From NCBI GenBank assembly GCA_051294905.1, contig CM119384.1, positions 22,196,001 to 22,260,000 on the forward strand: a DNA stretch of 64,000 bases, read 5' to 3'. Under the pieces are notes generated by a model. It worked only from the letters and a program-made list of their open reading frames with translations. It was not told the DNA's origin and searched no databases. The position numbers were made by a program, and so were the translations under genes. The stretch comes from Botryllus schlosseri (lineage: Eukaryota). Of the stretch, positions 4,119 through 58,300 are shown one piece after another. The first letter of the stretch is position 1. Every line of letters begins with the position of its first letter.

Positions 4119-4145
4119 ATTGGAGTGTTTAGTTGTATTAAGGTA
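4119..4145 (+). other. SL-exon-like sequence plus GT donor within the A0 3' UTR
   Basis: ATTGGAGTGTTTTAGTTGTATTAAG|GT versus recalled stolidobranch SL ATTGGAGTATTTGGTTGTATTAAG. Confidence 0.7.
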
Positions 4146-5947
4146 TATACAATATTGCTTTTTGTGCTAAAAACGCTCGGACATGCTGAACGACATGAAA
4201 AACAAAAACAAAAATGGTATATTAATTTCGAACCAGCTATCTTAGTCTGAAAATAAAATAGAAACCAACACTTTGGTGCCTGGTTTATTCCATACAACCT
4301 TGATATCATTTGCTTTGTAAAACATAAAACAAAATAAAAATAGTATAAAACTTACATAAAAACACCCAGACCGGAGGACTCCCCTACGCTTTGAGAGAGG
4401 GGAGCGCGATGGCCTGGGAATACGGCGAGCCGCAAAAAAAAAAAAAAAAAAAAAAAAAAAGGTAAGCATCGCCGAGTGCGCTCGGTATTTTTTCAACTGA
4501 CATGTGATGAACAATATGCTACGGGTAAACGTCGGGGTGTATTCCCGGCTATGACACATGACATTGACACATGACTCGAAGCCCAATACACATTGTCGTC
4601 TACTTCTGACCCGGCGTTTCCGATAGCCTCTCCTTTCCGGCGCGGCGCTACGCCCCAACTCTACCTCGTGGCGGCGGGCGACGGCCGATCAGTCGGTCTC
4701 GCGTCGCGTGTCGCGTCTCGCGTCTCGCGAACAAACGCTCGAATACGCATCTTCGGCGACGTCGATAAACTGACACGTCCGCACTTACGCGATCGTCAGG
4801 TTGCGACGCGCAAAGAAAAAAAAAAAAAAAAAAAAAAAGGTAGCATCTCGTCGAGGCAGGTGTCTTTTAGAAATATTTTTACAGATTGCTGGTATCGCTG
4901 TGATACACTGTTGTTAAAATAACTTTAATTACATCTGCGCTGTGCAGCTAGCCTAAAAAGCCGTGCCGCCTTAGACTTCAGCGCCGTACACGTGACTACT
5001 CTACAGACCTACCTCGCCTTACACGCGGCTGCCGTGAACAGACTTCAGCGTACGCGCAGTTGTCGTTGGTCTCTTTAAAACCTACAAACAGCGCGATACA
5101 TATAAGGTAGCCATAAATTAAATAGATTACCTGCAGTCCAGGGCTGTCTTGCCTGCAGTCTTCACAACATACGGCTCACGCTGTATCGACCGAGGTTTCG
5201 ACACACATACAGGAATAGCGCAACTTAGGCTGCTTGCCTGCATCTCCAGCATACAACAGCTGCTTTGCTGTCGCGCCGGTTCTTCTAAACAACATTGCCT
5301 GTAGTCTTAATAACCACACGGTCTCTTTGTGGCCTTACCTGCAAATCAGAATACGACACAGGCATATCAGCACACGCAACTTACCTGTTGTGTCTTCCGC
5401 GATAGAGCCTCGGCGAATCTTGTGGTTGCCGTATTTGTTCTGATTTGAATTGACTTGGATACTTCACCTGAAATTCAAGAAACACGCGGTTACCTTACTA
5501 TATCTGATTGGTTATGCTAACACACTGTGCTAAGCCGAACGGAAAACGAAAAATACACTACCACAACAGCCGCCGACGTAAAGTTGGAGAAGCGGCTACG
5601 GTACAAATTAAATTCGGGAATTATCAAATAAAAAAGACATATCTGGATAGCTTTTGGCTCATAGAACACAATCCAGGCTTTAAAATAACAAAAAGATCAG
5701 GATTAGAACCGTAATAACACCAATAACGCGAAAAACTAGCGATTGTTATCTAGCCCGAAGACCGGCATTGTTCCGACAGACGAAACAATCGCTGGACGAA
5801 CTCCCGATTGTTCGGTCGCGGAATCCAACAATAGACAGATTTTGGATGTCGGTGTCAGAGCCTAGAATCGACCGCACCAGAGGCTATAATAGTCTACAAC
5901 AGACTAACCTCCAGACAAATACAATAGAACGACGACGCATTGACAAA

Positions 5948-7258: not shown

Positions 7259-10200
7259 ATGGCCTCGCTAAATATTAACGGGATAGAATGTCACAACAAA
7301 AAATTAGAAAGAACTATCATACGAGGAAAGTATGATATAATAAACATACAAGAAGCACACAAAACAAACCTGAAGAAATTAGAACACATGGCAGCGAAAT
7401 ACAATTACAAAAGTCACATCAACACATTAGACAAATCGCAAAACTGGCAAGACAAAGAAGGAAGAAGAAAGAACTACTACCTAGGAACAGTAACACTAAC
7501 TAAAATAGAACTAGAAAAGACATACACGATCCGAAACGACATTATTATCCCACATAGAGCACAGCTATTAACACTTGAACATCGCGTGAATCAGACGTCT
7601 ACAATCCACATCTGGAATATCTATGCCCCAGCGACGATAGGGAGGATGCAATCAACTTTCTTTAAAAGGCTAACGAAAGCACTGACCAAAAAGACTAACA
7701 CCTATACGGTCATATGCGGAGACATGAATGTGGTCACTGATGTAAAAGACGTGAAAATAAAACGGAATTTTAGATTGAATCCGGCGGCGAAAATTTGGAT
7801 CAGACACATCAAAACAAACAAACTACTGGACGCCTTCAGAGACAGGAATCCCGACAAAGAGATATTCACAATCACCAAACATAATCAGGCCAGACGTATC
7901 GACCAAATCTACATCACAAAAAATCTACAACAGAACGTTAAAAAATTCGAATATAAAATAAACATCATGTCAGACCATAACTTCATGAGTAGCATAGTGC
8001 TAGAGAATGTCAAAAGAAAATCATGGGGCAAAGGTACGTGGAAGAACGACCCAGCCATGTATGAAGATGAAATAGTCGTAGACCGCTTCAAAGAAATGTA
8101 TAACTTCTACCTAGAACAGAAGAAAAACACCCCAAACATAACATCTTGGTGGGACCAAATGAAGCTAGGAGCGAAAGAAATGCTATTAGAAAGAGAAGCT
8201 GAGTTGAAAAAAAACAAGATCAGAAAATCAAAAGAGCTTGAAAATAAACTAGCGGATAGGAATATAGGACTAGAAGACATGACTCGAACAATTAAGGAGC
8301 TAAAACAGATAGAAGATGAGAAGACAAGAGAACAATGTAGAAGATATAAAATCAAAGAATTCGAAGAGAATGAACGACCTTCAAGATATTTCTATAACAA
8401 ACTCAAGGCCAAAAAGACCAAGAGCCAAATAGAAATTCTTGAAAACGAAGACAAAACTGAGACCTATAGAACAGAAAAAGAAGTATTAAATGAGACAAAG
8501 CGATTCTACGACGAGCTCTGGAATAACGCTGAGATAGTAGAAGAAGATAAACAAGAAATGTTTATCAACGAACTAGAAAATATATCCATAACAGATAGCG
8601 AAAGAGACTCACTAAACAAACCAATTGGCAAAGAAGAAGTAGAAAAGGTGATTAAAAACCTCAAGAATAACAAATCGCCGGGAGCAGATGGGCTCTCAGC
8701 CGAATTTTATAAAACATTCTGGCATGTTATAAAGAGAGAGTTAATAGAAACTTTCAACAGCGCCTTTCTTTTTAATAACCAATGCCAGTCGTGGAGACTA
8801 GGCATAGTCAGGGTTATATATAAAAAAGGAGATCCAAACCTCATAAAGAACTACAGGCCCATCACGCTACTTGACCAGGACAATAAAATCCTGTCCAAGG
8901 TGTTGGCGAATAGGTTAAAGGAACTATTGCCCAACATAGTAATGAGCCCACAGAAATGCAGTATAGAGGGAAGATCAATCTTTGACGCAGCACAAAATAT
9001 TGAAGCTGCCATTCAATATTCAAAAGACAAGAACCTACCTCTTCTGATCACGTCTTTTGATCAAGAGAAGGCTTTCGACAAAGTCAACCATGCCTTCCTG
9101 GGAAAAATCCTAGGAAGATTAAACATGGGTGATAATTTCACAAAGTACATTCAAAAAACATACAGAGAAGCTGCGAGCCAAGTAGAAATTAACGGAAAAC
9201 TCACGGAAGAAATATCCATCAATAACGGGATTAGACAAGGATGCCCTTTAAGCATGCCTTTATACGCCCTGTGTGCAGATCCGTTAATAAGGAAAATCGA
9301 GTGTAACAAAGATATCAAAGGCCTAAAACTGGGGAAACAAGAAATAAAGACGCAAATGTATGCGGATGACCTAACGGTATTTGCTATAGATAGGAAATCC
9401 CTAGAGGCGACCATCGATATACTAAAGCAGTTCGAAGTGGCTACAGGCCAGAAAATCAACGAGCAAAAAACAGAGACACTAAACATCAACAGCAAATCGA
9501 ATTTAGCATTATTAGGCTCGAAATATGAAAGTTGGAACAAGGAACAAGTAAAAATATTAGGATACCGTTTCGGCAAAAGTGACATACAAGACAGTTGGAG
9601 GGAAAAAATTGACAAGATAAAAAAAATACTAAATAATTACAGAGGAAGACACCTATCTTGGATAGGAAAGACAAATGTTTTAAAAAGCCTTGCGTGCACC
9701 CAGATCGCATATACCGCAAGAGTGAAGAGGATGCCTCGAGAAGTCCAAAAACAGATCGAAGGCATATTCTTCAGATATTTATACTTGCCAGAGAAAGTAG
9801 AGACGATAAAGAGAACAACCTTGATTAAAAAGAAAACAGAAGGGGGAATGAAAATACCCTATGTAACAACCTTGTCCGAAGCTTGCCAGATCATCAATTA
9901 CAAGAGAATGGCAAACCAAGACAAGCCGACTGAAATTTGGCATTACACAAAGATGTATTATCTTGGAACAAAGATTAGAGAAGTTAATGCTGAGCTATAT
10001 ACTAACGATATGCCACACAAGTTCAAATTAGAAAAGAACTTGGCAGACCAAGTGGAGCTCATCAAAAAAATAAAATTAGACAAAGAAGACTGGCAAAAAC
10101 TCACATTCAAGGAATTATATAACAAATTGAACGCATTCCACGAAAATCAAACAAACCAGAAAACAGACTGGGACAAGCTCACCCTCGAGAAGTCGAAGAT

Positions 10201-10663
10201 GAACATTATTTTAAAAAAAGAAGAAAAAATCATTAACTTCAGACTAGCGAACGAAGGATATTTGTTCGGAGAAGATAAGAGAAGAAGAAACCTTCTGAAA
10301 ATCAGAAAAGGGAAAATGGAAACACACAAATGTAGACTGTGTCGCCAAGAAAACGACAAAGTCCAACATGTGTTTAGTAAATGCAAATTCACACAGGACA
10401 TATTGAAAAAACTAGAAGAAATATTCAGCATCAGAGTCAGAGAGCCGAAGTTTATACTACAACATCAAGGCACGGCGAGCGAAACCACCATAGCCCTAAT
10501 CTCGATATTCAAAAAAGTCACGCTAAAATATAAATGGTACCTAGACATTGAAAATAAAACAACAGAAAACGACGAAGAAAAAAGAAATTTGATTCGAAAC
10601 ATCCACGAAAGACGGCGACACGTATCAGAAAAACACCAAATTGGAAACAACTCAACACCTTGA
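7259..10663 (+). CDS. B1 ORF2: APE endonuclease, reverse transcriptase, C-terminal CCHC (1134 aa, uninterrupted)
   Basis: SLNING, NIQEAH, NIYAP, CGDMN, RIDQIY, SDH (APE); KSPGADG, YRPITLL, FDQEKAFD, GIRQGCPLS, QMYADD (RT); CRLC...HVFSKC. Confidence 0.96.
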   Translation: MASLNINGIECHNKKLERTIIRGKYDIINIQEAHKTNLKKLEHMAAKYNYKSHINTLDKSQNWQDKEGRRKNYYLGTVTLTKIELEKTYTIRNDIIIPHRAQLLTLEHRVNQTSTIHIWNIYAPATIGRMQSTFFKRLTKALTKKTNTYTVICGDMNVVTDVKDVKIKRNFRLNPAAKIWIRHIKTNKLLDAFRDRNPDKEIFTITKHNQARRIDQIYITKNLQQNVKKFEYKINIMSDHNFMSSIVLENVKRKSWGKGTWKNDPAMYEDEIVVDRFKEMYNFYLEQKKNTPNITSWWDQMKLGAKEMLLEREAELKKNKIRKSKELENKLADRNIGLEDMTRTIKELKQIEDEKTREQCRRYKIKEFEENERPSRYFYNKLKAKKTKSQIEILENEDKTETYRTEKEVLNETKRFYDELWNNAEIVEEDKQEMFINELENISITDSERDSLNKPIGKEEVEKVIKNLKNNKSPGADGLSAEFYKTFWHVIKRELIETFNSAFLFNNQCQSWRLGIVRVIYKKGDPNLIKNYRPITLLDQDNKILSKVLANRLKELLPNIVMSPQKCSIEGRSIFDAAQNIEAAIQYSKDKNLPLLITSFDQEKAFDKVNHAFLGKILGRLNMGDNFTKYIQKTYREAASQVEINGKLTEEISINNGIRQGCPLSMPLYALCADPLIRKIECNKDIKGLKLGKQEIKTQMYADDLTVFAIDRKSLEATIDILKQFEVATGQKINEQKTETLNINSKSNLALLGSKYESWNKEQVKILGYRFGKSDIQDSWREKIDKIKKILNNYRGRHLSWIGKTNVLKSLACTQIAYTARVKRMPREVQKQIEGIFFRYLYLPEKVETIKRTTLIKKKTEGGMKIPYVTTLSEACQIINYKRMANQDKPTEIWHYTKMYYLGTKIREVNAELYTNDMPHKFKLEKNLADQVELIKKIKLDKEDWQKLTFKELYNKLNAFHENQTNQKTDWDKLTLEKSKMNIILKKEEKIINFRLANEGYLFGEDKRRRNLLKIRKGKMETHKCRLCRQENDKVQHVFSKCKFTQDILKKLEEIFSIRVREPKFILQHQGTASETTIALISIFKKVTLKYKWYLDIENKTTENDEEKRNLIRNIHERRRHVSEKHQIGNNSTP

Positions 10664-11065
10664 AAAAATTCGAAGAAAAGGCGGAAGAACCCCTAACATA
10701 AAAAGGGGGAAACCGCCACTGAAAATACAAGTACAAACCTGAAGACTTCAACGGAAGATTCGAGAAAGAATGCGGATGACGGAGACACGACGCCGAAGGG
10801 ATGCTGACGAACGACCGATGACGAACGACCGACGGACAACGATGATGATGACGATGATGCTGACGAAACCTGGAAAAGAAACTGAAATGAATATGATGCA
10901 TGGGTATGAATGCGAGTGCGAATGTCATTTTGTGTTTGAAACTTTACCGAATGAATGCTGCGATTGAGAACTGCGATTTGATAGATTAATTTGCCCTTTT
11001 CTTGTATTGAAATTCTATCTGAATTAAATTTGGGATGACCGCGGTCATCCCCCCACAAAAAAAAA

Positions 11066-14000
11066 TTGGCGCAACATTGATGGCGCAAGCTGCAAAGTAT
11101 TCACGCCAACAATAGAGAAAAGAGCGCAGCCCCAAAAAACTTGCACAAGGTGCAATAGAAAAGGACATCTGGCTACGCAATGCAACCTTGCATATTGTAG
11201 CCAATGTGAAAAAACAGGGCACACAAGAGAACAATGTGAGGAGCTTGAGAAAGAGTTTCCAGCATTGGGAAATCCGCAGAAACAAATAGTAAACAAAGAA
11301 TCAAAGAAGAACCCGACCTCTGAAGTCGAATCAGAGGAACAAGAAAAAGAACAAAACAACAAAAATGTAATAAACGAAATGAGCGAAGAGGTGGCAGAAC
11401 ACCTAACCTCCTCTTCATGCGATTCAGAGTCGGAAGAGGAAAGAGAAACCGATGATAGTGATGCACAAGGAAAAGGAGCTAGCAACCAAGAAGATGGCTT
11501 TGCTCTAGTGCAAAATAAAAATAAGAGGAAAAGACTCTCTACTGAGAGGAGGAGAAGTAACAGTAAGAAAAGAAACGTAACCATCTACTGAGAGGAGGAG
11601 AAGTAACAGTAAGAAAAGAAACGTAACCAATCCTAAGGACAAGAAATAGAAATGGAACTCCAGATTACCTCACTAAACATAAACGGGTTCACGAAACATT
11701 GGAAAAAGATAACTCAATTATCAAATAAATACAACATAGACGTGCTTTGCCTCCAAGAAGTACATAAAATAGATAAGGAGAAATTGGAAAATTGGTGTAC
11801 CAGTAACAACTTCGAGATGCATGCCAATTGTCTAGACGTAAAAGACACTTGGCGAGATGAGGATCAAGGTAAAAAGAACTACTGTCAAGGTACCCTTGTG
11901 ATAGTAAAAACAACTTTAAAACAAGAATACGACATAACCAACGATATTATAATAGAAAACAGAGTACAGAGAATTACATTGAAGAAAAACAACAAAGAAA
12001 ATTTGGAAATCTGGAATATATATGCGCCACCGGGAGTTTCAAAACATACAACAGACTTTTACAAAAATCTAGTGGAAAACACAAAAAAAAACAGGAAATC
12101 GCACACTGTTGATAGGAGACTTTAATCTAATTACAAACAAATTGGACGCTAAGAATAACCTAAATTTCAAAAGATCACTGGCCGCAAACATTTGGAAAAA
12201 TTTTACAGACATTCATGGGTACCAAGACATATACCGATCCAGACACCCGCACAAGAAGTTGTACACCAAGAAAACGGGAGACCAGGAAAGACGCATCGAT
12301 AACGCGTATGCCACCGACATCCTGAGCAAAGACATCACCAAATGTACATACAAGATCAATCCTATTTCGGACCACGTCTATTTAATGGAAATAAAAATTG
12401 GAAACCAAAAACAAAACAGATGGGGCAAAGGAATTTGGAAATGTAACAAAGAGGTATTAACAAACAAACAAACGAAAGAAAATATAAAAATGATCATTGA
12501 AGTTATGTCACGAAACAAACATAACTACACACACTTGTCGAAATGGTGGGATGATATAAAAAGCAAAATAAAAAGAGCCTTACAAGCGTATGAGGTAACA
12601 GCAGAGAAGATAGAAAAAAGAAAAATCAAAGAATTAGGTCGGAAAATAGAAGTAGCGGAGAACAATCAAGACCAAACGGCCAAAATAAAACTGCAAGGTG
12701 AACTGAAAAAGTACGAATGGAAGAAATTAGAATTTACAATAGAAAAAACGAAGATGAAAGATAGAGAAGTTGGCGAGAGACCAACGAAACCTTTTTTCGA
12801 TATGCTAAAGAAGAAAACATCCCTACAAAGAATGAACTGCGTAAGGGATAAAAACGAAAGGGAACTAAAAGACCCAAAGCAAATAAAGCAGAGGGTCGAA
12901 CAGTTCTATGAAGAGCTATGGAGGGCCCAGCCTGATGTAGATGAAGAAGAGCAGAGGCTCTTCTTAAAACAAATTAAAGACGTTAGGGTCAAAGAGGAAG
13001 ACATGCCTTCACTTGAAGGACCCATAACGCAAGAAGAGATCAGAGAAACGATAAAGAAAATGAGCAGTGACAAGACGCCCGGTAGCGACGGGCTGACCAA
13101 AACCTTTTATACCACCTACTGGGAGAACATAAAAGGACACCTAGAAGAACTATACAATAATGCACTGTATATGGGAGACACGTGCGAGAGCTGGAATAAG
13201 GGGATAGTAACTTTAATATACAAAAAGGGAGACTCGAAAAACCTAAAAAATTGGCGACCCATCACACTATTAAACCTGGACTACAAAATTTTAACAGCAA
13301 TTATATCCAATAGACTAAAAGAAGTAATGGAAAATCTGATCATAAATACACAAAAATGTGGAGTAAAAAATAGGCAAATTGCAGACGCTTTAAGAAACAT
13401 AAAAGCAGCATTAGACCAAGCATTCAGAAAGAACACAAATCTCATAGTAATATCCATAGACCAAGAAAAAGCTTTCGATCGTGTCAACCATAATTACCTA
13501 CATAAAATTCTGCATTCCTATGGCATACCAGTGGGAATAAGAAAATGCATAAAAAGACTATATGATAATTCATATAGCCAAGTGCAGATAAACGGTACAC
13601 TGACAAATGGCATAGACACAGGCAGGGGACTCCGTCAAGGATGTCCCCTCTAAGCATGTGTTTATATGCAATGACAGCGGACCCGCTGGCCAGAAAAATC
13701 ATGGCCAGCAAAGACATAAAAGGCCTGAAAATTGGAAAAAACGAAATTAGATTGCAACAATACGCGGACGACCTGACAGCAATAGTATCAAATGAAGATT
13801 CGGCAACAGAAGTTTTTAAAAATTTAGAGCAATTCGCAAAAGCAACGGGACAAATCAAAAACCGAAATTATATGTACTAAACCCAACCTAATTAGATCTG
13901 AAGAATATAAAAAATACATAGTGGAATCATCAAAAATACTCGGACAAATATTTGGCAGGAACTATATCCGCAAAACATGGGACAGAAGGATAGAGCAGGT

Positions 14001-15939
14001 GAAAAAAGTATTAACAACCTACCAGATGAGAAATCTCACCTGGTACGGAAAAGCAATCATAATAAATAGCCTGGCTGCCTCTAAGGTGATACACAACGCC
14101 AGGGTAATAAAAGTGCCAAAAGAGGTGGCGAACACACTGGAGAGGCTCCTCTTCAACTTTATATGGGCACCAGAAAAGATCGAGCCAATAAAGAGAAGCC
14201 ACATGAAATCAACCGAGATCATGGGAGACCTCAAAATAACCTGCATAAAAAGTAAGATCGAGGCATGCAAACTAGAGAAATATAAAATACTGACCAGCAT
14301 CGAGGAGCCAACAGAGTTCTGGCACCACGAGGCAGTCTATATTTTAGGATCAAAACTTGAGAAAATTAACGAAAAATTATATACAAACTCGGCTCCACAC
14401 AGCATAATCGTGTCGGACGAGTGGAAGAATATAATAAAAAGAGCGGAAGAAATGAAATGGGAAAAAGAAACCTGGGTAGAAGCAGCCCACAAAGACCTGT
14501 GTATCGGCATAAAAAAGCTAAATGCCAAACACATACCCAGAATAACAAAACCCTCTGGACAAGATATAAAGTGGAGAAAAATCACCACTACAAACGGGGA
14601 AAACAACCCCATAACAAATGCAGAGAGAGTAGTCAACATCAGAACGGCTGCAAAAGGATTCTTCTTTGGAGAAGACAGAAAAAGATTGAATATTTTTAAT
14701 ATTAACTCAATAAACACGACCATCACAGAATGTAAATTCTGTGGTCAAGATGAAGACAACATTGAACATATAATGGTCAAGTGCAGACTGGTGAAAAATG
14801 TGTTCAGTGCCTTCAAGGGGTTAATAAAACAAAAGGACATAGATTGTGAAAGTGTTCTTTACAATGAAAAACTAAAAAACAAGACCGATTGGACCATAAT
14901 AAGCATGATTAAAAAAGAAATAATCAAAAGGAAATTTGGACTAGACAAAGTCAATCAAAAAGTAAAGAACTTTGATAGGACAGTGAAAGACGTGGTCAGC
15001 AAAATAATAAAGAAATTATTCAGAAGGATATCGGTATTTGATAATGCAACAGAAGAGCAACTTTTTAAAAACGAATTGGTGTTCCTAGCTGAAGAATACG
15101 GATGAAATTGACTTAGAATCGTATCAAAGATATTAGTGGCGAAAACAACGATAGATTACCGGTACAAAAAATTTTTATTGTCATGATTCGGCAAAAAAAT
15201 AATATCATAAGATAGAGAGTGATTAGCACAACAAAATAATACCATTAGATTAGATTTTAGTGCAAAAACAGAGAAAATAGAAGCAAAATTAGACCGAGAA
15301 ACACCGATTGTTGAAAATAAAATAATCCGATTGTTCCAGAAAAGCGAAACAATGCAACCCGGCCGCCCCGATTGTATCCATTCATAAGAGGACAATCGCG
15401 AGCGAAATGACATCTCCGGCCCAATCAACCGTGACGCACCATTGAATTAGTAGCGAACCTACTAAAGAAAACGAAAAATAGAAGAAGAAAGAAGAAAAAC
15501 AGCACGAAAACGATAAATTAGACACGGAAAATTAACAAATAACGAAGGAAATCAATAACGAGAACAGAAAAGAATATTAACGGAAGAAAATAAACAAGAA
15601 TCATTTCGACTGACAAAACTGAAACACCAACGATGGGAGACGGACGACAGTGGATGATGACGGCGGACGATGACAGCGGAGGATGGATGACGGATGGATT
15701 GCAACGAACGCTGGATGGACGATGACGAGGACGATGAAAAAGAAACATGGACCGGAGAATTGCAATTGTGAGAATGGTTTGGTATGTATGTGCGCGTGAT
15801 TGAATATATCGTGACTGATATCTTTTGAATGCTGAAGTGTGAATGAACATAAATAAAGATATATATAATTTGCTTTTTTCTTGTATTGCAATTCTTTCGG
15901 AATAAAATTGTGATGACTGCGGTCACCGAGAAAAAAAAA
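11066..15939 (+). mobile_element. 5'-truncated Tx1-like retrotransposon B2
   Basis: Starts mid-ORF1 (NIDGASCKVF...CTRCNRKGHLATQC); frameshifted ORF2; 3' hairpin GTGATGAC-TGCG-GTCAC; poly(A) 15931-15939. Confidence 0.9.
11652..15105 (+). pseudogene. B2 ORF2 (APE-RT), frameshifted
   Basis: Consecutive ORFs 11652, 12109, 13641, 13921 carry SLNING, GDFN, SDH, QEKAFD, RQGCPL, QYADD, CKFC...HIMVKC. Confidence 0.92.
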
Positions 15940-15965: not shown

Positions 15966-15992
15966 ACTCAATAATTGATTGCTACAACTAAC

Positions 15993-16015
15993 GGAGTATT
16001 TGGTTGTATTAAGGT
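15993..16015 (+). ncRNA. Spliced-leader exon (21 nt) plus GT donor at the 5' junction of element C1; truncated SL RNA gene or target site
   Basis: GGAGTATTTGGTTGTATTAAG|GT, identical to the last 21 nt of the stolidobranch ascidian SL as I recall it. Confidence 0.75.
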
Positions 16016-17821: not shown

Positions 17822-17823
17822 AC

Positions 17824-21266: not shown

Positions 21267-21699
21267 TGCCTGTTACACACGCAAAAGAAGAAAATAGGAA
21301 GAAAACTAAAAACTCTGGTTGGTATGTTGGGTTCCAAGATAAACCTTGGTCAATCCAAGCGCCAACCAAAAATAAAAATCAGAAAAAACTTGTCCTGGGG
21401 AGGAGAGGGAGGCAACCCAAAGAGCCCCCCAACCGCTCGCGTCCGGCGGTTAGCTTTTTCCACACAAATGGAAATACTGCCGCTTCAAGTCCGATGGAGT
21501 ATTTGGTTGCACTGAGGTATCTGAGATCAGCCATCGCGAATAAAAACAAAGAAAAATAGGTATATTCAATTTCAACTCAGTTATTTAATTTGAATATAAC
21601 ATACAATAAAACCCCCAGACCGTAGCAGGGCTTATATCAGATGAGAGAAGCCCTGTGAAAGTCTGGGTTTCCGGAGAGCCGTAAAAAAAATAAAAAAAG

Positions 21700-28021: not shown

Positions 28022-29218
28022 GCACAAAAGAGGAAACGAGAAGAAAACGCAAGACGTTGGGGGGGTTTCCTGGGTTCCAAGATAAACCTTGGTTAATCCA
28101 AACGCCAACCCAAAACAAAAAATAGTAAAAACCCCCTCAGGGGAGGATGGAGACGCAAAACAAAAACCCCCAACTGCTCGCGACGGGTGGTCAGCTTTTC
28201 CAACGCAACGGGAAATACTGCCCATCCAGCCCGTCGCAGCAGTTGGAGTAATGAGGTATGGAAAAGACAAAAATAACCACTGAAATAGTTATATTAATTT
28301 CATTAGTTATATTAATTTCAACTTTAAAACAACTCAGTTGGAAATAAGTACACCTTAGTTGGAAAATATATTAAAAAAACCCTAACCCGGAGGCGACCCT
28401 AAACCTTAGAGAGGGTCGAAGAAGGGCAGGAAATACGGCGAGCCGCAAAAAAAAAAAATAAAAATAAAAAAAAGGTAACCAATCGACCGCGTAAGTATCA
28501 TTAACGGCTTTTGCAGATTCGAGGAGCGTACCGGAGCCGCTGGGGCAATAGATAACTACCGTAAACCTTAGTTTAACCTAGCGTTTACAACTAGGCTACC
28601 TACTTCCTCCTTCCTTCTTTTTCATCACCGACGGACTTCTACTTCTACTTCGGGTCTCCTTCAGACTCAAACCCCCTCCCTCCTAAGACCTGACTCGTCT
28701 TCGTGAGTCAGGTCTTAAGGAGTCTGTGCCTACCTCTACTGGAGCTTGACTCGTCTTCTAGAGTCAACTCAGAGTCTTTTCTCTTCGAGTCCTGACTCTC
28801 TCTCTCGAGTCAGGACTTGTTGAGTCTTTTCTTTGGAGACTTGACTCTCTCTTGAGTCAAGCCTCCACTTTCTCCTTTCTCTCGCGCCTCTACCTTGAGG
28901 CGACGGGAGACTGTCTGGCTTTCCTTTTAAATTACAAAAGCGCTACGACACCGCCCAGACGGTGATCGTACGCTAGTCTAGCGCAACTGATACTACAGTA
29001 TCAGTTCTCGAAAGCGCGCAGAAACGCCTTTAAAAACGCGTTCAACAGACACGCTAAAGCAGCCTGAAGTTGCAGCAAACCTTGCTTGTAGTTACCATAC
29101 TGCTAAAGATATACAGGCTTAGCTGACAAATAGCGGACGTGGACTGTGGACAGTGGACTGCAGTAGATGCAGACACCGCTTACCAGTAGGGAAAATCAGC
29201 TTCCCAGGCCATTTTAAT

Positions 29219-35329: not shown

Positions 35330-35884
35330 ACAAAATTTTGCAAAACATAGAAAGAAAACTAGCAACAACAGATGCATAGAAAGAAAACTAGCAACAACAG
35401 ATGCATAAAGAGAAAAAAAGATGAATATCCAACTGGGGAGGGGCCAAAACATGAGCCGAAACTCCCCAACATAGCGGTCTTCCGTGGGTACGGCTTCTAC
35501 CGTAAACCGAAATACAAAATAAGACGAGCGATCAAAACGAACGATCACCGTAAACGAAAAACAAACTCGAGATGTATAAGTAACAAGCCCTCATAACACC
35601 AGGCCAAACCGAACGTGACCCAGTCCCCCGGACTCAACCGGGCCGAAGCTGAGCACGTCGTGAGAAGGAAAAAGAAAAACAACTAATATACTAGAAAAAC
35701 CAGGCGAAAGCGAGTCCCAGTTTTCCCGACGATAACGGGCAAGAAACTTGGCTCGCCTGAGTTAGCTAAACAGAACAAAAAACCATAACCCAAAAAGAAC
35801 ATAAAACCCCAGTCCGGAGCCGGTCCCTATGCTTGAGAGAGGGGCCGGCAATGGTCTGGCAATTCGGAGAGCCGAAAAAAAAAA

Positions 35885-38292: not shown

Positions 38293-38299
38293 AATTCGG

Positions 38300-44572: not shown

Positions 44573-47500
44573 CACTAGAACTACCGGAACTTCGAACTAC
44601 CTAGAACTACCTTGTGGCCTTTTTGACGCATGTTGAATTTTCTTCGACTAAATGCATTTACCAGAGCGAAAAAATCAGCACAAATCTCAATAAACGGCAT
44701 CAGAAACCATTGTTTATTGCGCTCATAGCTACTTGCAATATGTCACATTATTGCGCTCATAGCTACTTGCAATATGTCACATACACCTTAGGTCATTACT
44801 TATAAAACAAATCGCCGTTTTTTGGTGTAACATATAAGTGTTGCTCTGGTGCGCATTTGGTATTTGAGCACGTTCTTTAAAAATTTAGAGTAGGTTCCAG
44901 ATCCGCTTTAGCCACATCATCATTGTTGGTTATTGCTGACATATCATAAAGCTTATCAGATTAGATTTGCATAATTCAATTTTGCAACCAATCCTCGATT
45001 TGCATATTTTTAGAGTATCGGCATTTTGGCAAGTAGACGATCATTCACATTCTATGAAAACATGCACGGACCATCGTCGACTTGTTGGTACCCTCATAAA
45101 ATACTGTCTTGCAACCTGACCAATAATATCCCCCTGGTTTTGTTTCGTTATAACATTTAACCGTCACTGGTTTCTTGTTTGTGTTGTTTCTGAAGGAGAC
45201 ATTTACCTCAGGTTGCAGTGAAATCAATATATATGTGTACAAATTCGATCTCTACACTGGCATCTCGCCGTTACGCTAATCAACAAGATGATAGCTTTGA
45301 AAAGTGTGGCTACATGAAGCTTCCTGTGTTCCTTCTGGTCCTGGGTAGCTTCAAGCAACTTTTGATAATAGTGTCAACTGGGACTTCGTTTGCTTCTCCA
45401 AGCGTGTACAGTAGGGTTGTCCAAAATTTGGAAAATGTTACAAATCCGCCGTTGTAATGTCTTATTCGATAGATTATTGATAAAAATCGACACTGGGCCT
45501 AAAAGAAACTCACAGGAAAGCCGTTAAGATTTCGTACAAAGCGTTTGAAAGTAGCTGCCGAAGAATGGGCGTGCCACCGACCATAGAACGGCGAGAAGAC
45601 TAGTAATCACGAAACCACGGCTCTGGATTGGCTAATTGGCTATGCTTCAATGACCACGACAGCAGCAGCTTGATGATGAGGTGATCAAGGAGTCTGCTAC
45701 CGGCGGCGATTCTAACTGCGCATTGTATGTAGGTTGACAGATAATGATTTAGGATTGATTCAGGGTATGTTGAGGTACGCAGTAAATGATGTACAGCAAC
45801 AGCTGCTTCACAAAAACGTCCAAAGCATGACTGCTTTATTTTGAAGGAAACCGCCGAAGCCTCTATGCCTTGTTTTCAACGAGGGAAAGCATAGGCGCTT
45901 ATGCAAGTGGCGACGGATTCCTAGTTTCAGAAAGGATCTATCATTATTGAATACAAATAAAAAGTTTGACAATGACACTACTTTGTCTGTGTGTGCTTAT
46001 TGGGCTCAGGTTGTAGTACATAGTTGAAGTTTTGATAGCTCTAAGGATCGGCTGAATTAGCGGGTTAGCTTGGCACTTATCAGATGCTTTTACATCAAAT
46101 TGTATTCACTTGCAAGTGTTGTCAAATTCCTTGATGCTGGTGCAGAAAAGAGGTGTAAAAGTGAGCACATACTATGCCGGATATGATATGCTAAAGACCT
46201 TGATAATCGTGCAGAAAAGGGGTGTAGGGGAAAGCACAGACAATGTTGCATAGTGCATAGTATCCAGCATAGTGTTTATATAATATCAAGCATAGTCCGT
46301 GCTTCCATTTATACCTCGTCTCTGCGGCATCATTAGGGACTTTTTAAAATACTTACAAGTGAATTCAATTTGCTGTAAACATCTGATAAGTGCCAAGCCT
46401 AACCGTCTGATTCAACCGATCCCTAGATCATTCAAAACTTCAACTATGTACTACAACCTGAGCCCATTAAGATCACCCAAATTGAAGTGTCGTTGTTAGG
46501 CTTTATATTTGTATTCAATAATGATACAGCCTTTCTGAAACTAGGACTCCGTCGCCACTTGCATAAGCGCCTATGCTTTCCCTCGTTGAAAACAAGGCAT
46601 ATAGACTACGGCGGTTTCCTACACAATAAAGCAGTCATGCTTTAGACGTTTTTGTGAAGCAGCTGCTGTTTTCACATCATGTATTTCGTATCTCAACATA
46701 CCCTGAATCAATCCTAAATCATTATCTGTCAACCTACATACAATGCGCTTTCAGAATCGCCGCCGGTAGCAGACTCCTTGATCACCTCATCATCAAGCTG
46801 CTGCTGTCGTGGTCATTGAAGCATAGCCAATTAGCCAATCCAGAGCCGTGGTTTCGTGATTACTAGTCTTCTCGCCGTTCTATGGTCGGTGGCACGCCCA
46901 TTCTTGGGCAGCTACTTTCAAACGCTTTGCACGAAATCTTAACGGCCTTCCTGTGAGCTTCTTTCAGGCCCAGTGTCGTTTTTTATCAATAATCTATAGA
47001 ATAAGACATTACAACGGAGGATTTGTAAGATTTTCCAAATTTTGGACAACCCTAGTGTACAGCCACATTCACGTAACATTGTTTCGAGATGGATTACATC
47101 AGACTCTTCACATTACTATGCTTGGATAATGTATAGATTATGGAAGAGGTGTCCTGTCCTATCCTTGCCTAAATATGAGACGCCCTTGTACAGATACTTG
47201 GTAGCAGCAGCGTCCACCATCTGACATTTTACCCCAAATATTTGCTGGCATTTCGACCATGTAATGAACGAAAACAATATTATCTTTATCGAGTCCACAC
47301 CTTTTTTTACTCCTTATGTCAATGGAAAGCTCATGACTTCCATAAACCAGTTCTTCGAGAGGGCCTGACTAAACATAATGCACCCATGCCCTCAGTCCTC
47401 ATATGCATTCAATTCACTAGATTCAGCTCACTCTCCCCCCGAAGATCCATCTCGTAGACCGGAGCAAAGGCCCTTTGCCCGTGTACAACCCTAGTATATT

Positions 47501-47988: not shown

Positions 47989-50128
47989 TTAAATATGGCT
48001 TTATCATGAAAATTCATGATAAGAATTGTTCGACTGGTTTTTCTGGAAAACGTAGTCGAATACCGTTGGGATGAACTAGTGTAGCGGTGTGCAACGAGCG
48101 ACTTCAGGCCTATGAGACTCGTTCATTTCGAGGCCAACCCCTTCTGCGTCGGGGCACATGAAGACGTAAAGTTTTGACGCACAAACCGCTGATAAAAGGC
48201 GGTGCCAAAAACATGAGCGGCGACAAAACCTCGGTCTGAAAATGACCGATGCTGGATGGCAAAACCTTTCGAGATGAGTTGGATATGCTCCGTTGTCGGC
48301 ACGGAATAGTACCGTTCTTGCAATCTGAGTAGACAGTAGTACAACTGCGATACGCAGAGGAATTTAATTAGCCCTAATTTGAAATCGCGTGTGTCAGACA
48401 TGTTTTGTAGAGCTGTGTTGGGTAGAAATGTGGTGTGAGCGTTCTGTATGTCATACATGCCCGTAAAATCGTAGCATACAACTGTAATATTGAAATATAT
48501 ATTCCTTTTCATGGGTGAGGCTCGGGTCGCGAGATGCCACAAAAACTCAGATTAGTTTTTGTGGCAGTCTAAAAGTTGCTTTACCGTTATTAAACTCTCA
48601 TGCATTCTCAAGCAAGATTGAGCTAAAGAGTAGAATACACAGTATCGTGAGTTGTTTGCTATTCTCATTAACTTGCGAGACAGAAGTTGGAGCAACGTAT
48701 CATCTGGTAGCGAGCTCTAATGTGCATATACTCTCGTTGATCGTTTTGCACCTTATATTCCAAAGACATAAGGCAAAAGCCTCAACACAAACATGTGGGT
48801 TTTTCATCCTTTCGACAAACTGGAGCCTCACGGGACCTTTGAGTCAGCTCTCAAAAACGATTTCTTCCGGAAAGCATTTTTCACTCGCAAAAAATACGCT
48901 GTATTTTGGATAGGAGTGCAGAACAGATTATAAGACCTGGCCATCCAAGCACTAGTACATGTTCTTGTACAAATCTCCAACAACATCGTTTGGCCGAGAA
49001 GGATTTCAGTGAAATAATTGAAAGCAAAACGAGCGAAAAAAGTTGCCTTTTTAATGAGACACTTGATAGCTTAAGCTACATAGTAGCCAATTTTTTGCAC
49101 ATCTGAACAAAACCATTGTTACGTAGGCCTATCTATCTTCATCTTCTTTTTGTATAACGATTTTCGATTAGTTTGGGCGAATGAAATTTATTTTACAAAA
49201 AAAGTGCGAACGGAGCTCAAAAAGGTTGAAAAGCACTGCACTAGAGCAAAGCCATCTTCTTGGTTGCTAGCTCCTTTTCCTTGTGCATCACTATCATCGG
49301 TTTCTCTTTCCTCTTCCGACTCTGAATCGCATGAAGAGGAGGTTAGGTGTTCTGCCACCTCTTCGCTCATTTCGTTTATTACATTTTTGTTGTTTTGTTC
49401 TTTTTCTTGTTCCTCTGATTCGACTTCAGAGGTCGGGTTCTTCTTTGATTCTTTGTTTACTATTTGTTTCTGTGGATTTCCCAATGCTGGAAACTCTTTC
49501 TCAAGCTCCTCACATTGTTCTCTTGTGTGCCCTGTTTTTTCACATTGGCTACAATATGCAAGGTTGCATTGCGTAGCCAGATGTCCTTTTCTATTGCACC
49601 TTGTGCAAGTTTTTTGGGGCTGCGCTCTTTTCTCTATTGTTGGCGTGAATACTTTGCAGCTTGCGCCATCAATGTTGCGTCAACCTTTTTTTTTTTTTTT
49701 TTTTGCGGCTCTCCGGAAGCCCAGACTTTCACAGGGCTTCTCTCATCTGATATAAGCCCTGCTACGGTCTGGGGGTTTTATTGTATGTTATATTCAAATT
49801 AAATAACTCAGTTGAAATTAAATATACCTATTTTTCTTTGTTTTTGTTCGCGATGGCTGATCTCATGTACCTCAGTGCAACCAAATACTCCAATAGCTGC
49901 GTCGGGCTTGAAGCGGCAGTATTTCCATTTGTGTGGGAAAAGCTAACCGCCGGACGCGAGCGGTTGGGGAGTCTTTGGGTTGCCTCCCTCTCCTCCCCAG
50001 GACAAGTTTTTTCTAATTTTTATTTTTGGTTGGCGTTTGGATTGACCAAGGTTTATCTTGGAACCCAACATACCAACCAGAGTTTTTAGTTTTCTTCCTA
50101 TTTTCTTCTTTTGCATGTGTAGCAGACA

Positions 50129-53570: not shown

Positions 53571-53574
53571 AGGT

Positions 53575-54729: not shown

Positions 54730-55392
54730 GTCCCGCTTAGCCTGTAGGCTATCGGAAAAGGATAGCTGTAGCAGAGTTTGCTGTCTGTTTGTTGAAGCGC
54801 GCTTTGTTTAGTTCCTATGTGCTTTGCGAAGACCGATACGCCGGTTTCGCTACGCAAAGAGCTATACGGACGCCGACTAGGCGGTGTCGTAGCGCTTTTC
54901 TAATTAGTCCAAAGGTAGCAGACAGGCTCCCGTCGCCTTAAGCGAAAGGCGCGGGAGAGAATAAGGTAAAGTAGAGACTTGACTCTCGAGAGAGAGTCAA
55001 GTCTCTGAAGAATAGACTCAACAAGTCCTGACTCACGAAGACGAGTCAGGACTACAAGAGGAAAGACTCTAACTAGAGTTGACTCACGAAGACGAGTCAA
55101 GCTCTAGTAGAGGTAGATACAGACTCCTTCGAGACTCGACTCGGGAAGAGGAGTCAAGTCTCGACGAGGGAGGAGGGGTGAGTCTGAAGGAGACTCGAAG
55201 TAGAAGTAGGAAAATCCGGCGATGAAGAAGGAGGTAGGAGAAATAAGCCTAAGTAAAAGAGAAATTAAACCTAGGTATAACGAAACTTATCTAACGTTTA
55301 CGGTAACTACAACGGCCACAGCGGCTCAATTGAAGATCTTTATACCTGGAAATAGCCGTTACGTACTTAACACAATCAATATTGCGTCAACC

Positions 55393-58300
55393 TTTTTTTT
55401 TTTTTTGCGGCTCTATGGATACCCAGACTTTCGCAGGGCTTCACTCATCTGATATAAGCCCTGCTACGGTCTGGGGGTTTTGGGTACATCTTCGTTGTAT
55501 ATAAGTATAGGATCTTCATTGTAGACCATATTACAACCAAACACTTCAATGGATGGAGTATAGGTAGGTTTGGCGTACTTCGTTTGTGGGCAAGTAGCTT
55601 CCCACCTGTCGCACGCGGTTTGGGGCTTTTGATTCGGCCCCTCCCTCCTCCCCAGAAGGGATTTTGCCCAATTTTCTCCTTTAGGTTGTCGTTGGATTGC
55701 CTAAACTTTCGTTTGGAACCCATTTGGGCATACGTTTTACGGTGTTTCCTCCAAGATCTTGTTATTAAGGTTTTTTAACTCGCTGCAGAGCAGGGTTCTG
55801 GCTGCGAGTCTTTTTATTGCTGTTGCTGTGATTTTTTTGTATATATTTTTCGCCAAATTGGTTTTGTCATATTCGTTTTCGTTGGTTCTGTCCAGTTCTA
55901 GTCTGTGTTTGAGCATTTGTGTTTTGTAAAGCGTGGTTATAAATTTTGTTTGTTTTTGATTAATTTCAGTGGGTTTTCCAAGAATTATGTTCTCTCTCTG
56001 CAGAGGTGTTCTCTTTCCGTTTTTTCTGAGGAGGTTTTCGAGGAGGTCTAGGATTGGTTTGGCTGCACCGCATTCCCACAGAATGTGGGCAGCGGTTTCT
56101 TGGTGGTGTCCACACTGTCTGCAGTGCAGCCTTGCCAATCCGCCCGTCCTGGTCGTGAGGATGTTGTGTTTTATTCGGGTTGCCCCGAATAGATACCCCT
56201 CATGCGCGGCTCTATAACTCGCGATTTTTTCACTGTTTTTTACCAAGTGTTCCTCCCCAGGCTGGTCGTGGAGAATCTTAGCCCACTGTGCCTGGGGGGT
56301 GTCGGGGTTTGGCTGCGTGTTCTTGTTCCTCAGAGCCCCGTATATTTGTTTCTGCGTGGCTTCTGTCCACTGCTCTTGTGTCCAGGCCAAGGACCTCTTG
56401 GTGTCCAATAGCTCTCTCCACTCCTCATTTAAGAGGTCTCTCCTGGGACCCCTGATGTTTTGTAGTTCCGGGTTGATTTTTTTTGTTTGAGATCCAAGAA
56501 TGTATAACGCGTGGTGGTGCCAGAACTGGTCTGGCTCCTTCATTGCTGCGATGATTTTGATCTTTTCTACTCTACATGCCTGTATTTTGCTGGCGATATG
56601 GGGGAGGTCAAAGCCCCCCTCCTTGGCGGCTCTCATCATTGTGTTTCGTCTGATGACCTCTATTTTCTTGGGCGACCACATGAATTTACATATAAGGTTG
56701 TTCAGTTTGGTGACAGTGCTTTCGTTTGGGGGGCACGTTTTTGCCTGGTACAGAACCTTTGGGACTATGATGGTATTGATGATAATTTTCTTTCCGTACC
56801 AAGTTAAATTTCTTCTGTTGTTGCTGATACATGCTTGGTTTACTTTCTGTATCACCTTGTCCCAATTTAGTTTGTTTTGGTTCTTGCCAATTTGCTGGCC
56901 AAGTATTTTGATCGTAGGTTTTCTTAGATTTGTCAGGTTTTGGTAGATGTTGTCGTCTTTCGGTGAGTTCATTTCAAGGATTTCGGTTTTGTTTATGTTT
57001 AGTTCTTGTCCAGTGGTTTGTTTTAGTTTTTCGAATTCTAGTATGGTCTGTTTTACAGATTCGTAGTTAGTGCAAAGGATTGTAATATCATCCGCGTACT
57101 GCTCGATTTTTATGGTTTTGCTGCCTAATTTAATTTTATGGTTTTGCTGCCTAATTTAATTCCAGTGATAAGTTTGTTCCTACGGATCCTTTCCGCCAGG
57201 GGCTCTGCCGCTAAGACATATAAATATGTGCTTAGCGGACATCCCTGGCGGATGCCCCTTTTGATGGTGATTTTCTCTGTCATCGCGCCGTTTATTACGA
57301 TTCTGCTGTATGAGTTTTGATACAGGTGCTTTATTAAATCGGTGATTTTCTTCCCGAACTTGAAATGCTCCATGATGGTGAAAAGGGTTTCTTGAGACAC
57401 CATATCAAACGCCTTTTTTTGATCAAAATTGGTGATGAGCAGGGGTGTTCCTCTTTGCTCTGTTAACTCTTTCACTGTGGCCACGTTCCTCAGGACGTCA
57501 GATATCTGACGTCCCGGGACCGAGCATTTTTGAGACGTTCCTACTATATGCGGCATGGATTCCTTAATCCTGTTAGCCATGATCTTCGCCATTATTTTGT
57601 AATCGCAATTCGAGAGCGATATTGGCCGCCAGTTGTCGAGGCATAACATGTCTCCTTTTTTCGGAATCAGTACTACGTGCGATTCCCCCCACGTCTTTGG
57701 TATGCTTGTGAAGCATAGCGCATTGTTATAGATTTCTAGGAGACTGTTTTTAAGGGTCCCGAAGAATGTGGAGTAAAATTCTGGCGAGAGTCCGTCCGGT
57801 CCAGGTGTTGTTGAGGTTTTTTGGGAGCGTAGCGCAATTTTTATTTCTTCCTCTGTTATTATTTGATCTTGTTGTGATCGTTGGTCCGGAGGGATTTCCT
57901 TTTCGAGTTCATTTACCATATCTTTGATGCTCCCTTTGGGTGCGTTGTGCGCAATGCCCCATAGGTTGTGGTAATATTTATGTACGTGAGTAAGGATGTT
58001 GTTTTTCCCTCGTAATGGCTCTTTGTTGGTGTCGGTGAGCTCCGTGATGCATTTTTGTTTTTGTTTTACTTTCAATTGTTCGTAAAACTGTTTCGTTGGC
58101 TTTTCTTGGTCTTCCATGTTATTTTTGTATTCTGACTTCATCAGGAAATCTATTTTTGCCTTCTCTAGGATTTTCAGCTCCTTGATTAGCTTGTTTCTCT
58201 TCTCGTTTGTTATATTTGGGTTCTGTAGTAGTTTCTTTTTTTGGCTTATTTCTTTCGTTTCTATTTGTTTTTGCTCTATGCCGTATTGTATCGATGTTAT

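What the first reader, a model, noticed from the sequence alone, without database searches (positions are those of the whole stretch)
4119..55550. The elements carry an SL-exon copy with intact GT donor inside their own 3' UTRs
Seen at the same relative position, ~100-300 nt upstream of the poly(A): A0 4119-4145 ATTGGAGTGTTTTAGTTGTATTAAG|GT; C1 21494-21518 ATGGAGTATTTGGTTGCACTGAG|GT; C2 (minus) 49894-49869 ATTGGAGTATTTGGTTGCACTGAG|GT (21/24 to the recalled SL); E2 (minus) 55550-55525 ATTGAAGTGTTTGGTTGTAATATG|GT (20/24); D ~28243-28258 degenerate TTGGAGTAATGAG|GT. A target-specific retrotransposon carrying a copy of its target is unusual. Possible roles (inference): an RNA guide that pairs with the target bottom strand during TPRT; a mobile SL donor that compensates for disrupted SL genes; a self-provided landing site; or a fossil of 3' transduction of an SL gene.
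Basis: partly seen in the sequence, partly recalled or inferred. Interest (0 to 1): 0.85.

Follow-up and report, generated by a model that had tools for sequence, protein, structure and literature searches.

The report
Spliced-leader copy inside LINE 3' UTRs
A group of sea-squirt jumping genes (LINEs) that insert at the splice donor of spliced-leader RNA genes keeps a well-conserved copy of that leader inside its own 3' untranslated region; it looks functional, probably as a mimic of the target, but it is not what sets target choice.

Summary
The window has five sites within 7 mismatches of the tunicate spliced leader (SL): four in the 3' UTRs of A0, C1, C2 and E2, and one SL exon at the 5' head of C1. 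Chance predicts 0.12. D carries a deleted version.

Genome-wide, the block sits at the same UTR position in at least 12 LINE lineages whose UTRs are otherwise about 60% alike. Its variants are family-specific, so it is inherited with the element.

It is the second most conserved 25-base stretch of the UTR (0.79 pairwise identity; median 0.60). SL bases 3-17 are nearly fixed, bases 18-25 are looser, and similarity stops right after GGTA. GT is missing in 3 of 12 lineages.

The core can pair with an upstream anti-SL motif. The H lineage lost the block yet still inserted four times at SL-type donors, so the block is not the specificity determinant.

I found no insertions at the donor of internal blocks and no splice joints. 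RNA coverage was too thin to test either. Cross-species comparison was not possible.

Best reading (0.35): a selected RNA element that mimics the target and helps dock the template at the SL gene.

The scan had already noted the SL-donor-targeting LINEs and SL-headed elements elsewhere in this genome. None of the notes I retrieved describes this 3' UTR block.

The parts
4119..4144 (+). A0 3' UTR SL-like block (SL bases 2-25 + GT), 22/24 to the SL
21493..21518 (+). C1 3' UTR SL-like block (variant ..GGTTGCACTGAG|GT)
49869..49894 (-). C2 3' UTR SL-like block, 21/24 to the SL
55525..55550 (-). E2 3' UTR SL-like block, 20/24 to the SL
28243..28257 (+). D degenerate block: the L020/L025-family block with a 10-base internal deletion
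21462..21481 (+). C1 upstream anti-SL-like motif (ACACAAATGGAAATACTGCC). GCAA and AAATAC can pair with TTGC and GTATTT of the block. The same motif is at 49915-49934 (-) in C2 and 28203-28222 (+) in D
21613..21682 (+). C1 3'-terminal structured module (outer stem CCAGAC/GTCTGG, inner stem with compensatory changes, ..GAGCCGY before the poly(A)). Equivalents: A0 4364-4433, C2 49705-49774 (-), E2 55407-55476 (-)
15990..16015 (+). SL exon at the 5' head of C1. It is part of the transposed unit: the same head is on the C-family copy at a non-SL site, L045
4461..4497 (+). Remainder of an SL-RNA-like gene right after A0's poly(A): GGTAAGC.., a hairpin, then a U-run. This is the target-site flank
35330..35884 (+). 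H-family 3' UTR. It keeps the upstream motifs and terminal module but lacks the SL-like block, and is still inserted at an SL-type donor flank

Best explanation
The block is a selectively maintained copy of the host spliced-leader exon (SL bases 2-25 plus GTA). It is built into the 3' UTR of one superfamily of L1/Tx1-like, APE-type LINEs that insert at the exon/donor junction of SL-RNA-type genes and of SL heads carried by other elements.

Origin (inferred): an internalised target junction. Similarity to the SL gene stops right after GGTA, the same place where the elements' 5' heads (SL + GGTAA) stop resembling the gene.

Function (inferred): an RNA-level mimic of the target. The exon core (SL bases 3-17) is probably held in a stem with an upstream anti-SL motif. 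It is constrained by an invariant outside partner. That partner is either the antisense strand of the SL exon next to the nick, which it would pair with a few bases away from the active site, or the element's own SL-reading protein module. Either way the template's 3' end is docked on an SL gene before poly(A)-primed reverse transcription.

The block is an auxiliary enhancer. Target choice itself is made by the protein.
For: Shown:
- The block is at the same UTR position in 27 of 30 related loci and in at least 12 lineages, with family-specific variants.
- It is the second most conserved 25-column window of the UTR: 0.79 pairwise identity against a median of 0.60.
- Mismatch to the SL per site and lineage is 6.7% for bases 3-17 and 25% for bases 18-25. 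It is 67-100% at intron positions +4 to +6. The skew has P about 5e-5 under uniform scatter.
- The 3'-terminal module of the same UTR drifts by compensatory changes in 5 pairs, whereas the block stays fixed in sequence. That fits a partner that does not co-evolve with the element.
- The block is in sense orientation, so it is complementary to the strand that is nicked.
- About three quarters of the independent 3' junctions in this superfamily are poly(A) followed by GGT.. or ..GCATCG. The downstream sequence varies, so the shared recognised part must be the SL exon.
- A 10-bp pairing with the upstream motif is kept in 92-97% of cells, against 32-55% when the partner is slid. The predicted duplex energy is -11.6 kcal/mol.

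Precedent from the literature: in APE-type SART1, reverse transcription can start at an internal 3' UTR site when the poly(A) is short (PMC7265360).
Against: - The H lineage lost the block, and four independent copies or relatives still sit at SL-type donors. L039 also lacks it.
- Block-bearing copies also occur at non-SL sites (L013, L020, L025, L060).
- The array family sits in a second SL-like gene type whose exon lacks the block's best-conserved 5' half.
- The stem has only 1-2 compensatory changes and is not the minimum-energy fold of single sequences.
- There is no experimental or RNA evidence. Coverage in four RNA runs was near zero.
- All the families are low-copy: about 26 exact-core blocks genome-wide.
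Confidence: 0.35

Rival explanations
1. Structural element only. The block is one strand of a conserved 3' UTR hairpin (anti-SL motif paired with the SL-like core) that serves RNP assembly or RT binding. Its likeness to the SL reflects ancestry and does not serve target recognition.
For: Pairing potential is kept in 92-97% of cells. The common T-to-C change at SL base 18 turns a G-U pair into G-C with the upstream motif (9 GC against 7 GU). Other UTR blocks are about as conserved (0.78-0.80). H shows the block is not needed for targeting.
Against: A purely structural stem should drift by compensatory change, as the terminal module does. Instead the core stays SL-identical across lineages. SL bases 3-7 (TTGGA) lie outside the proposed stem but are just as conserved. 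The stem is not the minimum-energy fold of single sequences.
Confidence: 0.2
2. Neutral fossil. The block is a relic of a target junction or read-through capture, for example a tail-only insertion at an SL donor that was later co-transcribed with an upstream LINE. It has no present function.
For: Similarity ends exactly after GGTA, the junction position used by these elements. The block has been lost or damaged in H, L039 and D without ending those lineages. The post-block UTR is only weakly like the SL intron.
Against: The block shows 0.79 identity against a UTR median of 0.60, and only 6.7% mismatch in the core across 12 lineages whose flanks have diverged by about 40%. Substitutions are strongly non-uniform (P about 5e-5). 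Family-specific variants rule out repeated fresh capture.
Confidence: 0.13
3. DNA-level promoter element. The SL exon may contain an intragenic promoter element of SL genes, as I recall was reported for the Ascaris SL gene. The UTR copy would then start transcription near the element's 3' end. That would express the downstream array member, or rebuild an SL-like transcription unit with the intron half left after the poly(A).
For: An invariant host factor would explain sequence constraint on the exon core rather than on the donor. The elements stack head to tail, so each 3' UTR lies 150-300 bases upstream of the next head or of the SL intron remainder. The elements also carry the SL exon at their 5' end, where a portable promoter would be useful.
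Against: There is no evidence that tunicate SL exons have promoter activity; the Ascaris case is from memory. The benefit would go to the neighbour or the host rather than to the element. No reads start at the blocks, though coverage was near zero.
Confidence: 0.1
4. Working splice donor. The block acts as an SL-like donor, either trans-spliced onto mRNAs (compensating for disrupted SL genes) or cis-spliced to the acceptor at the head of the next element.
For: AAG|GTATG follows the block in many lineages. Branch-and-acceptor signatures lie at the heads of downstream elements. A weak likeness between ..TTTCAAC in the UTR and the U-run region of the SL RNA appears in A0 and C1 (p 0.02-0.05).
Against: GT is absent in 3 of 12 lineages, and donor-proximal bases are the least conserved. 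A block inside a UTR has no cap. In most lineages similarity to the SL intron, including its U-run (the presumed Sm-binding region), is not significant. No joints were seen at 49869 or 55525 in four RNA runs, but depth there was 0-0.5.
Confidence: 0.06
5. Self-provided landing site. The internal copy attracts new insertions of the same elements.
For: One SL-headed SINE is inserted inside a UTR block with a 17-bp target duplication (L006/L040).
Against: None of 97 A8-GGTAT junctions genome-wide continues with post-block UTR sequence. None of about 25 independent junctions of this superfamily lies in a block. With about 35 blocks against 200 or more SL-donor sites I would expect roughly 3-4, so blocks look under-used. 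The single case is at a different position (GG|TTG) and involves a different tail family.
Confidence: 0.03

Closest known systems
Tx1 / L1-group APE-type site-specific LINEs (Tx1L; Keno at U2 snRNA genes; Mutsu, Dewa)
   Same: Two ORFs. ORF1 has a CCHC knuckle. ORF2 has an APE endonuclease followed by RT, and its closest solved relative is human LINE-1 ORF2p (E 8e-58, against 6e-21 for R2). The elements have poly(A) tails, insert into small-RNA genes and form tandem stacks (PMC4640811).
   Different: The target is the spliced-leader exon/donor junction. The elements carry the target exon at their 5' head and a second, conserved copy inside the 3' UTR. I know of no Tx1-clade element described with an internal target copy (from memory and four library searches). 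Placement in the Tx1 clade was not tested by phylogeny here.
Spliced-leader-specific retrotransposons SLACS/CZAR/CRE (trypanosomatids) and NeSL-1 (nematodes)
   Same: They parasitise SL RNA genes, presumably as a multicopy safe-harbour target.
   Different: Those encode a restriction-like endonuclease and belong to the early-branching groups (PMC4640811). Here the endonuclease is APE-type. The insertion point is the exon/donor junction.
Target homology in template RNAs of R1, R2 and telomere-specific SART1/TRAS
   Same: Template sequence matching the target can set where reverse transcription starts. SART1 can initiate at an internal 3' UTR site when its poly(A) is short (PMC7265360).
   Different: As I recall it (not checked here), in those systems the homology is at the extreme 3' end and matches DNA on the primer side of the nick. 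Here it lies 110-290 bases upstream of the poly(A) and matches the other side of the nick, the SL exon.
snRNA-headed SINEs (SINEU) and U6-L1 chimeric retrocopies
   Same: Small nuclear RNA sequence becomes part of retroelements through the LINE machinery. The F elements here begin at SL base +1.
   Different: In those cases the snRNA piece is a 5' head. Here the piece in question lies inside a LINE 3' UTR and is conserved across LINE lineages. The comparison is from memory.

Membership tests
L1/Tx1-group APE-type non-LTR retrotransposon | ORF2 with an N-terminal APE endonuclease followed by reverse transcriptase | tested here: met
   Exo_endo_phos plus RVT_1 in window ORFs 7259-10663 and 57125-59197
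L1/Tx1-group APE-type non-LTR retrotransposon | RT closest to L1-group enzymes rather than R2 or other groups | tested here: met
   Best PDB matches are human LINE-1 ORF2p at 7.7e-58, against R2 at 6e-21
L1/Tx1-group APE-type non-LTR retrotransposon | ORF1 with a CCHC zinc knuckle; 3' poly(A) tail | tested here: met
   zf-CCHC in ORF1s; poly(A) of 8-43 bases at element ends
Tx1 clade specifically | Phylogenetic placement of the RT within the Tx1 clade | not tested
An earlier scan note calls the elements Tx1-type, but I did not check this
SL-specific RLE retrotransposons (CRE/SLACS/CZAR, NeSL) | Restriction-like (PD-(D/E)xK) endonuclease C-terminal to the RT | tested here: not met
   The endonuclease is APE-type and N-terminal. 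Not a member; only the target class is shared
SL-specific RLE retrotransposons (CRE/SLACS/CZAR, NeSL) | Insertion into SL RNA genes | tested here: met
   Poly(A) followed by GGTAAGC.. or ..GCATCG.. or by SL-derived heads in about three quarters of junctions
Functional SL RNA gene or SL donor | SL exon followed by a GT donor | tested here: inconclusive
   Present in all window copies, but absent in 3 of 12 lineages, and the donor-proximal bases are the least conserved
Functional SL RNA gene or SL donor | Sm-binding site and hairpin downstream of the donor | tested here: inconclusive
   Only weak likeness (..TTTCAAC): p 0.02-0.05 in A0 and C1, not significant elsewhere
Functional SL RNA gene or SL donor | The leader variant is found on mRNAs | not testable with these tools
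   The single read-laying run gave near-zero coverage and covered only the locus, not mRNA 5' ends
3'-end target-homology templates (R1/R2 read-through, TRAS/SART) | Homology at the extreme 3' end of the template, matching the primer side of the nick | tested here: not met
   The block is 110-290 bases upstream of the poly(A) and matches the exon side of the nick

The most novel reading that the evidence does not exclude
An APE-type LINE uses part of its own 3' UTR as a guide. The sense SL copy pairs with the nicked strand of the SL exon, and possibly the upstream anti-SL motif pairs with the other strand. The RNA thereby contributes to finding or holding the target. That would make it a partly RNA-programmed eukaryotic retrotransposon.
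Probability: 0.2. Interest if true: 0.9.

Novelty: new variant of a known kind. Interest (0 to 1): 0.6.

Why it matters
Site-specific LINEs are thought to find their targets through protein-DNA contacts. The template RNA is thought to contribute, at most, a few bases at its 3' end.

Here a 25-base copy of the target is held nearly constant inside the 3' UTR, while the rest of the UTR diverges and the neighbouring RT-binding structure evolves by compensatory change. That pattern points to a direct link between the template RNA and the target, or to a shared reader of both.

If the link is base pairing, it would be a natural example of RNA-assisted targeting in an L1-group element. That would bear on efforts to retarget retrotransposon-based gene insertion. 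If the link is protein mimicry, it would show how a LINE couples recognition of its RNA to recognition of its site.

The elements are also APE-type parasites of SL RNA genes in a chordate. The published SL-gene parasites I could find all use a different endonuclease.

Tried and rejected
- RNA evidence: four bulk RNA-seq runs of the species were laid on window:49650-55640. Depth was 0-2 except over the 5' UTR hairpin repeats. There were no joints or loose ends at the block donors. This is uninformative, and it used the only read-laying run.
- Cross-species co-variation: the best non-self ORF2 relatives are only 30-38% identical. The nearest (P0100) has no DNA on file. The others (L046-L050) come from AT-rich unrelated organisms and have no SL-like block. 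The test could not be done.
- Whole SL RNA embedded in the UTR: local alignment of the post-block UTR against two SL intron types was significant only marginally, in A0 and C1. Not adopted.
- Landing pad: 0 of 97 A8-GGTAT junctions lie in blocks.
- Internal priming at the block giving in-register fusions to GTAAG: only two GCATTAAGGTAAG sites were found, and none for the known family variants.
- Tail-only copies made of a true SL followed by post-block sequence: none.
- Rfam: no family reaches its gathering score in the window.
- Canonical SL gene with A0's intron variant: this variant is unique in the assembly. A0's flank is therefore SL-RNA-like but not shown to be a major SL gene.
- Literature: no paper in the library describes tunicate SL-targeting APE LINEs or an internal target copy.
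Full report
**What the window is.** It is a stack of non-LTR retrotransposons. They lie head to tail on the + strand from about 5 to 41 kb and on the - strand from about 41 to 60 kb.

- ORF2s carry an APE endonuclease plus RT, and ORF1s carry a CCHC knuckle.
- The closest solved relative of ORF2 is human LINE-1 ORF2p at 8e-58, against R2 at 6e-21.
PMC3795323 lists GATTGGAGTATTTGGTTGTATTAAG as the chordate (tunicate) SL.
- The genome is 495 Mb. The window is C14:22196001-22260000.

**The observation.** The four blocks and D's degenerate copy are at the stated places. At up to 7 mismatches the window holds only these four plus one SL exon at 15990-16015. Shuffled sequence gives 0.12 sites.

**The block is inherited with the elements.**

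- A genome search with C1's 3' UTR found 41 matches.
- In 27 of the 30 fetched loci the block lies at the same relative position, 113-260 bases before the poly(A).
- More block-bearing lineages turned up later (L058, L060).
- Variants are family-specific: ..GGTTGCACTRAG in the C family, ..GGTTGCTTTAAG in the arrays on C7 and C12, ..GGTTGTAATAAG in a third family, and TTGAAGTGTTTGGTTGTAATATG in the E family.
- The block therefore replicates with each lineage and is not captured afresh each time.
- The families are low-copy: only 26 exact-core blocks followed by GTAT occur genome-wide.

**Conservation.**

- In an alignment of 12 sequences (10 used for scoring), the block is the second most conserved 25-column window, at 0.79 pairwise identity.
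- It roughly ties with the extreme 3' end (0.80) and with a CAACCGCTCGCGAC..GGTGG motif (0.78). The median window scores 0.60.
- Measured against the SL across 12 lineages, bases 3-17 mismatch at 6.7% per site, bases 18-25 at 25%, G/T/A of the donor at 8-25%, and intron positions +4 to +6 at 67-100%.
- The excess of changes in the last 8 exon bases has P about 5e-5 under uniform scatter.
- So the exon core is constrained, the donor-proximal part is loose, and similarity to the gene stops right after GGTA. GT is missing in 3 of 12 lineages.

**Contrast within the same UTR.** The terminal 65 bases form an outer stem (CCAGAC/GTCTGG) and an inner stem. Five pairs of this module show compensatory double changes. 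That is typical of an RT-recognition structure co-evolving with its protein. The SL block does not drift this way. This suggests (inference) that its partner does not co-evolve with the element. Candidates are the SL gene itself, SL RNA, or a factor that reads the SL.

**A possible stem.**

- About 30-50 bases upstream lies a conserved motif, ..GCAAAYGGAAATAC... It is an imperfect reverse complement of GTATTTGGTTGC in the block.
- The 4+6 bp pairing is kept in 92-97% of cells, against 32-55% with the partner slid.
- Only 1-2 changes are compensatory. The remaining changes are mostly wobble-compatible.
- The frequent T-to-C change at SL base 18 strengthens the stem.
- The predicted duplex energy is -11.6 kcal/mol, but the stem is not the minimum-energy fold of single sequences.
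- I treat the stem as likely but not shown.

**Targets.**

- 3' junctions of this superfamily are mostly poly(A) followed by GGTAAGC.., GGTAAC.., GGTAC.., GGTTGACGCAA.., TGAGCATCG.. and similar.
- These flanks are the donor side of SL-RNA-like genes or of SL-derived heads of resident elements. This explains the head-to-tail stacks.
- Downstream flanks vary, so the common recognised feature must be the SL exon (inference).
- A0 is followed by an SL-RNA-like remainder: GGTAAGC, a hairpin, then a U-run. That variant is unique in the assembly.
- The array family sits in a second SL-like gene type..ATTGATTATGATAAG|GTGAG...
- Some copies lie at non-SL sites (L013, L020, L025, L060). One lies just upstream of a U6 gene (L040).

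**The SL is also at the 5' end.** C1 starts with the SL exon followed by GGTAACGCAAC... The C-family copy on C11 sits at a non-SL site with different flanks and starts with the same head. The head is therefore part of the transposed RNA. Both the head and the UTR block stop resembling the SL gene after GGTA(A). This fits an origin of the UTR block as an internalised target junction (inference).

**The block is not the specificity determinant.**

- The H family (window 28474-35884, plus L052 and L053 at 97% and 89%) keeps the upstream motifs and terminal module. It lacks the block, through a deletion running from the anti-SL motif to ..AATAAG.
- Its three independent copies, and a 70-74% relative, are followed by TAGGCATCG.., TAAGCATCG.., TAAC.. 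and TGAGCATCG... All four are SL-type donor flanks.
- L039 also lacks the block.
- The protein alone is therefore enough for targeting. Any role of the block is auxiliary.

**Other proposed roles.**

- *Landing site:* none of 97 A8-GGTAT junctions continues into post-block UTR. None of about 25 independent junctions lies in a block. Given about 35 blocks against 200 or more donors, I would expect roughly 3-4, so blocks look under-used. One SL-headed SINE sits inside a block at GG|TTG, with a 17-bp duplication.
- *Internal priming or short-circuit products:* none were found.
- *SL donor:* the donor is the least conserved part, the likeness to an Sm site is marginal, and no joints were seen. RNA depth at the blocks was 0-0.5, so this test is empty.

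**Verdict.** The block is real, inherited and under position-specific constraint. It is best read as a target-derived RNA element that mimics the SL exon and helps dock the template at SL genes, either by pairing with the nicked strand away from the active site or by binding the element's SL reader. My confidence is 0.35.

Rival readings are: structure only (0.2), neutral fossil (0.13), DNA-level promoter element (0.1), working donor (0.06) and landing pad (0.03).

Earlier notes of this scan had already reported the SL-donor-targeting LINEs, SL-headed LINEs and SINEs, and variant SL genes elsewhere in this genome. None of the notes I retrieved describes the 3' UTR block.

Noticed in passing
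window 21709-22233, 22226-22770, 35885-36394; L001, L004, L005, L007, L009: Short (about 540 bp) poly(A)-ended F elements. Full copies begin at SL base +1 and continue with GTAAGCATCG and an 8-bp stem that shows G-C/C-G compensatory changes between copies. The SL+GTAAG pattern they begin with occurs at least 153 times, dispersed across the genome, and 5 of the 10 sampled sites are such copies, each with a unique upstream flank. This looks like an SL-RNA-headed SINE whose tail resembles the B/G LINE tails. The scan has a similar note (s1-278689).
   Followed up: partly
window about 455-490 (- strand); L006 about 1475-1500: The first 37 or so bases of a U2 snRNA, antisense in the window, followed by non-U2 sequence. 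Rfam gives no full U2 hit. A 25-base antisense U2 piece also sits at the 5' junction of a SINE insertion in L006. These may be U2-associated retroelements or template-switch products.
   Followed up: no
L042:6020-6085: An intact small-RNA gene resembling a second SL type: ..ATTGATTATGATAAG|GTGAGTTC.., a hairpin CACCGGG/CTCGG, then ATTTTTAAAC. The same gene type hosts the tandem LINE arrays on C12 and C7. The heads of C2 and G in the window carry related short leaders (..ATTGATTGTGTTAAG).
   Followed up: partly
L040:1578-1640 (G000:C4, about 8.4656 Mb): A block-bearing LINE copy ends with its poly(A) about 20 bases upstream of a U6 snRNA gene.
   Followed up: no
window 16026-16060, 22771-22810, 28474-28515, 36395-36435, 55392-55345 (-): Element heads carry GTAAGTA, a TAACGGC branch-like motif and a TTTCAG|GT acceptor within about 37 bases after the SL exon. 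This could be a mini-intron or trans-splice acceptor that would yield an SL-led mRNA. It matches first-reader note s1-300928.
   Followed up: no
window 54850-55250: The only part of C2 with RNA-seq reads is the 5' UTR array of GACTC..GAGTC hairpins. Reads are 90-95% alike and show 'skips 115' and 'goes back' joints. These look like repeat-number variants from related copies rather than splicing.
   Followed up: partly
window 1737-2503 and 3125-3907; 45405-47061: Two inverted-repeat structures. One is a 90%-identical inverted pair that interrupts A0 between its ORF2 end and its 3' UTR. The other is a 1.66-kb self-complementary (87%) stretch. They may be foldback or DNA-transposon insertions.
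   Followed up: no
window 11057-15939 vs 49694-41194; 16027-21698 vs 55369-49689; 37909-41205 vs 59628-56382: G, C and E elements occur twice in opposite orientation at 99%, 96.7% and 90% identity, but in a different order. A0's 3' UTR also recurs at 99% identity 10 kb upstream of the window. This suggests local segmental duplication and inversion on top of retrotransposition.
   Followed up: no
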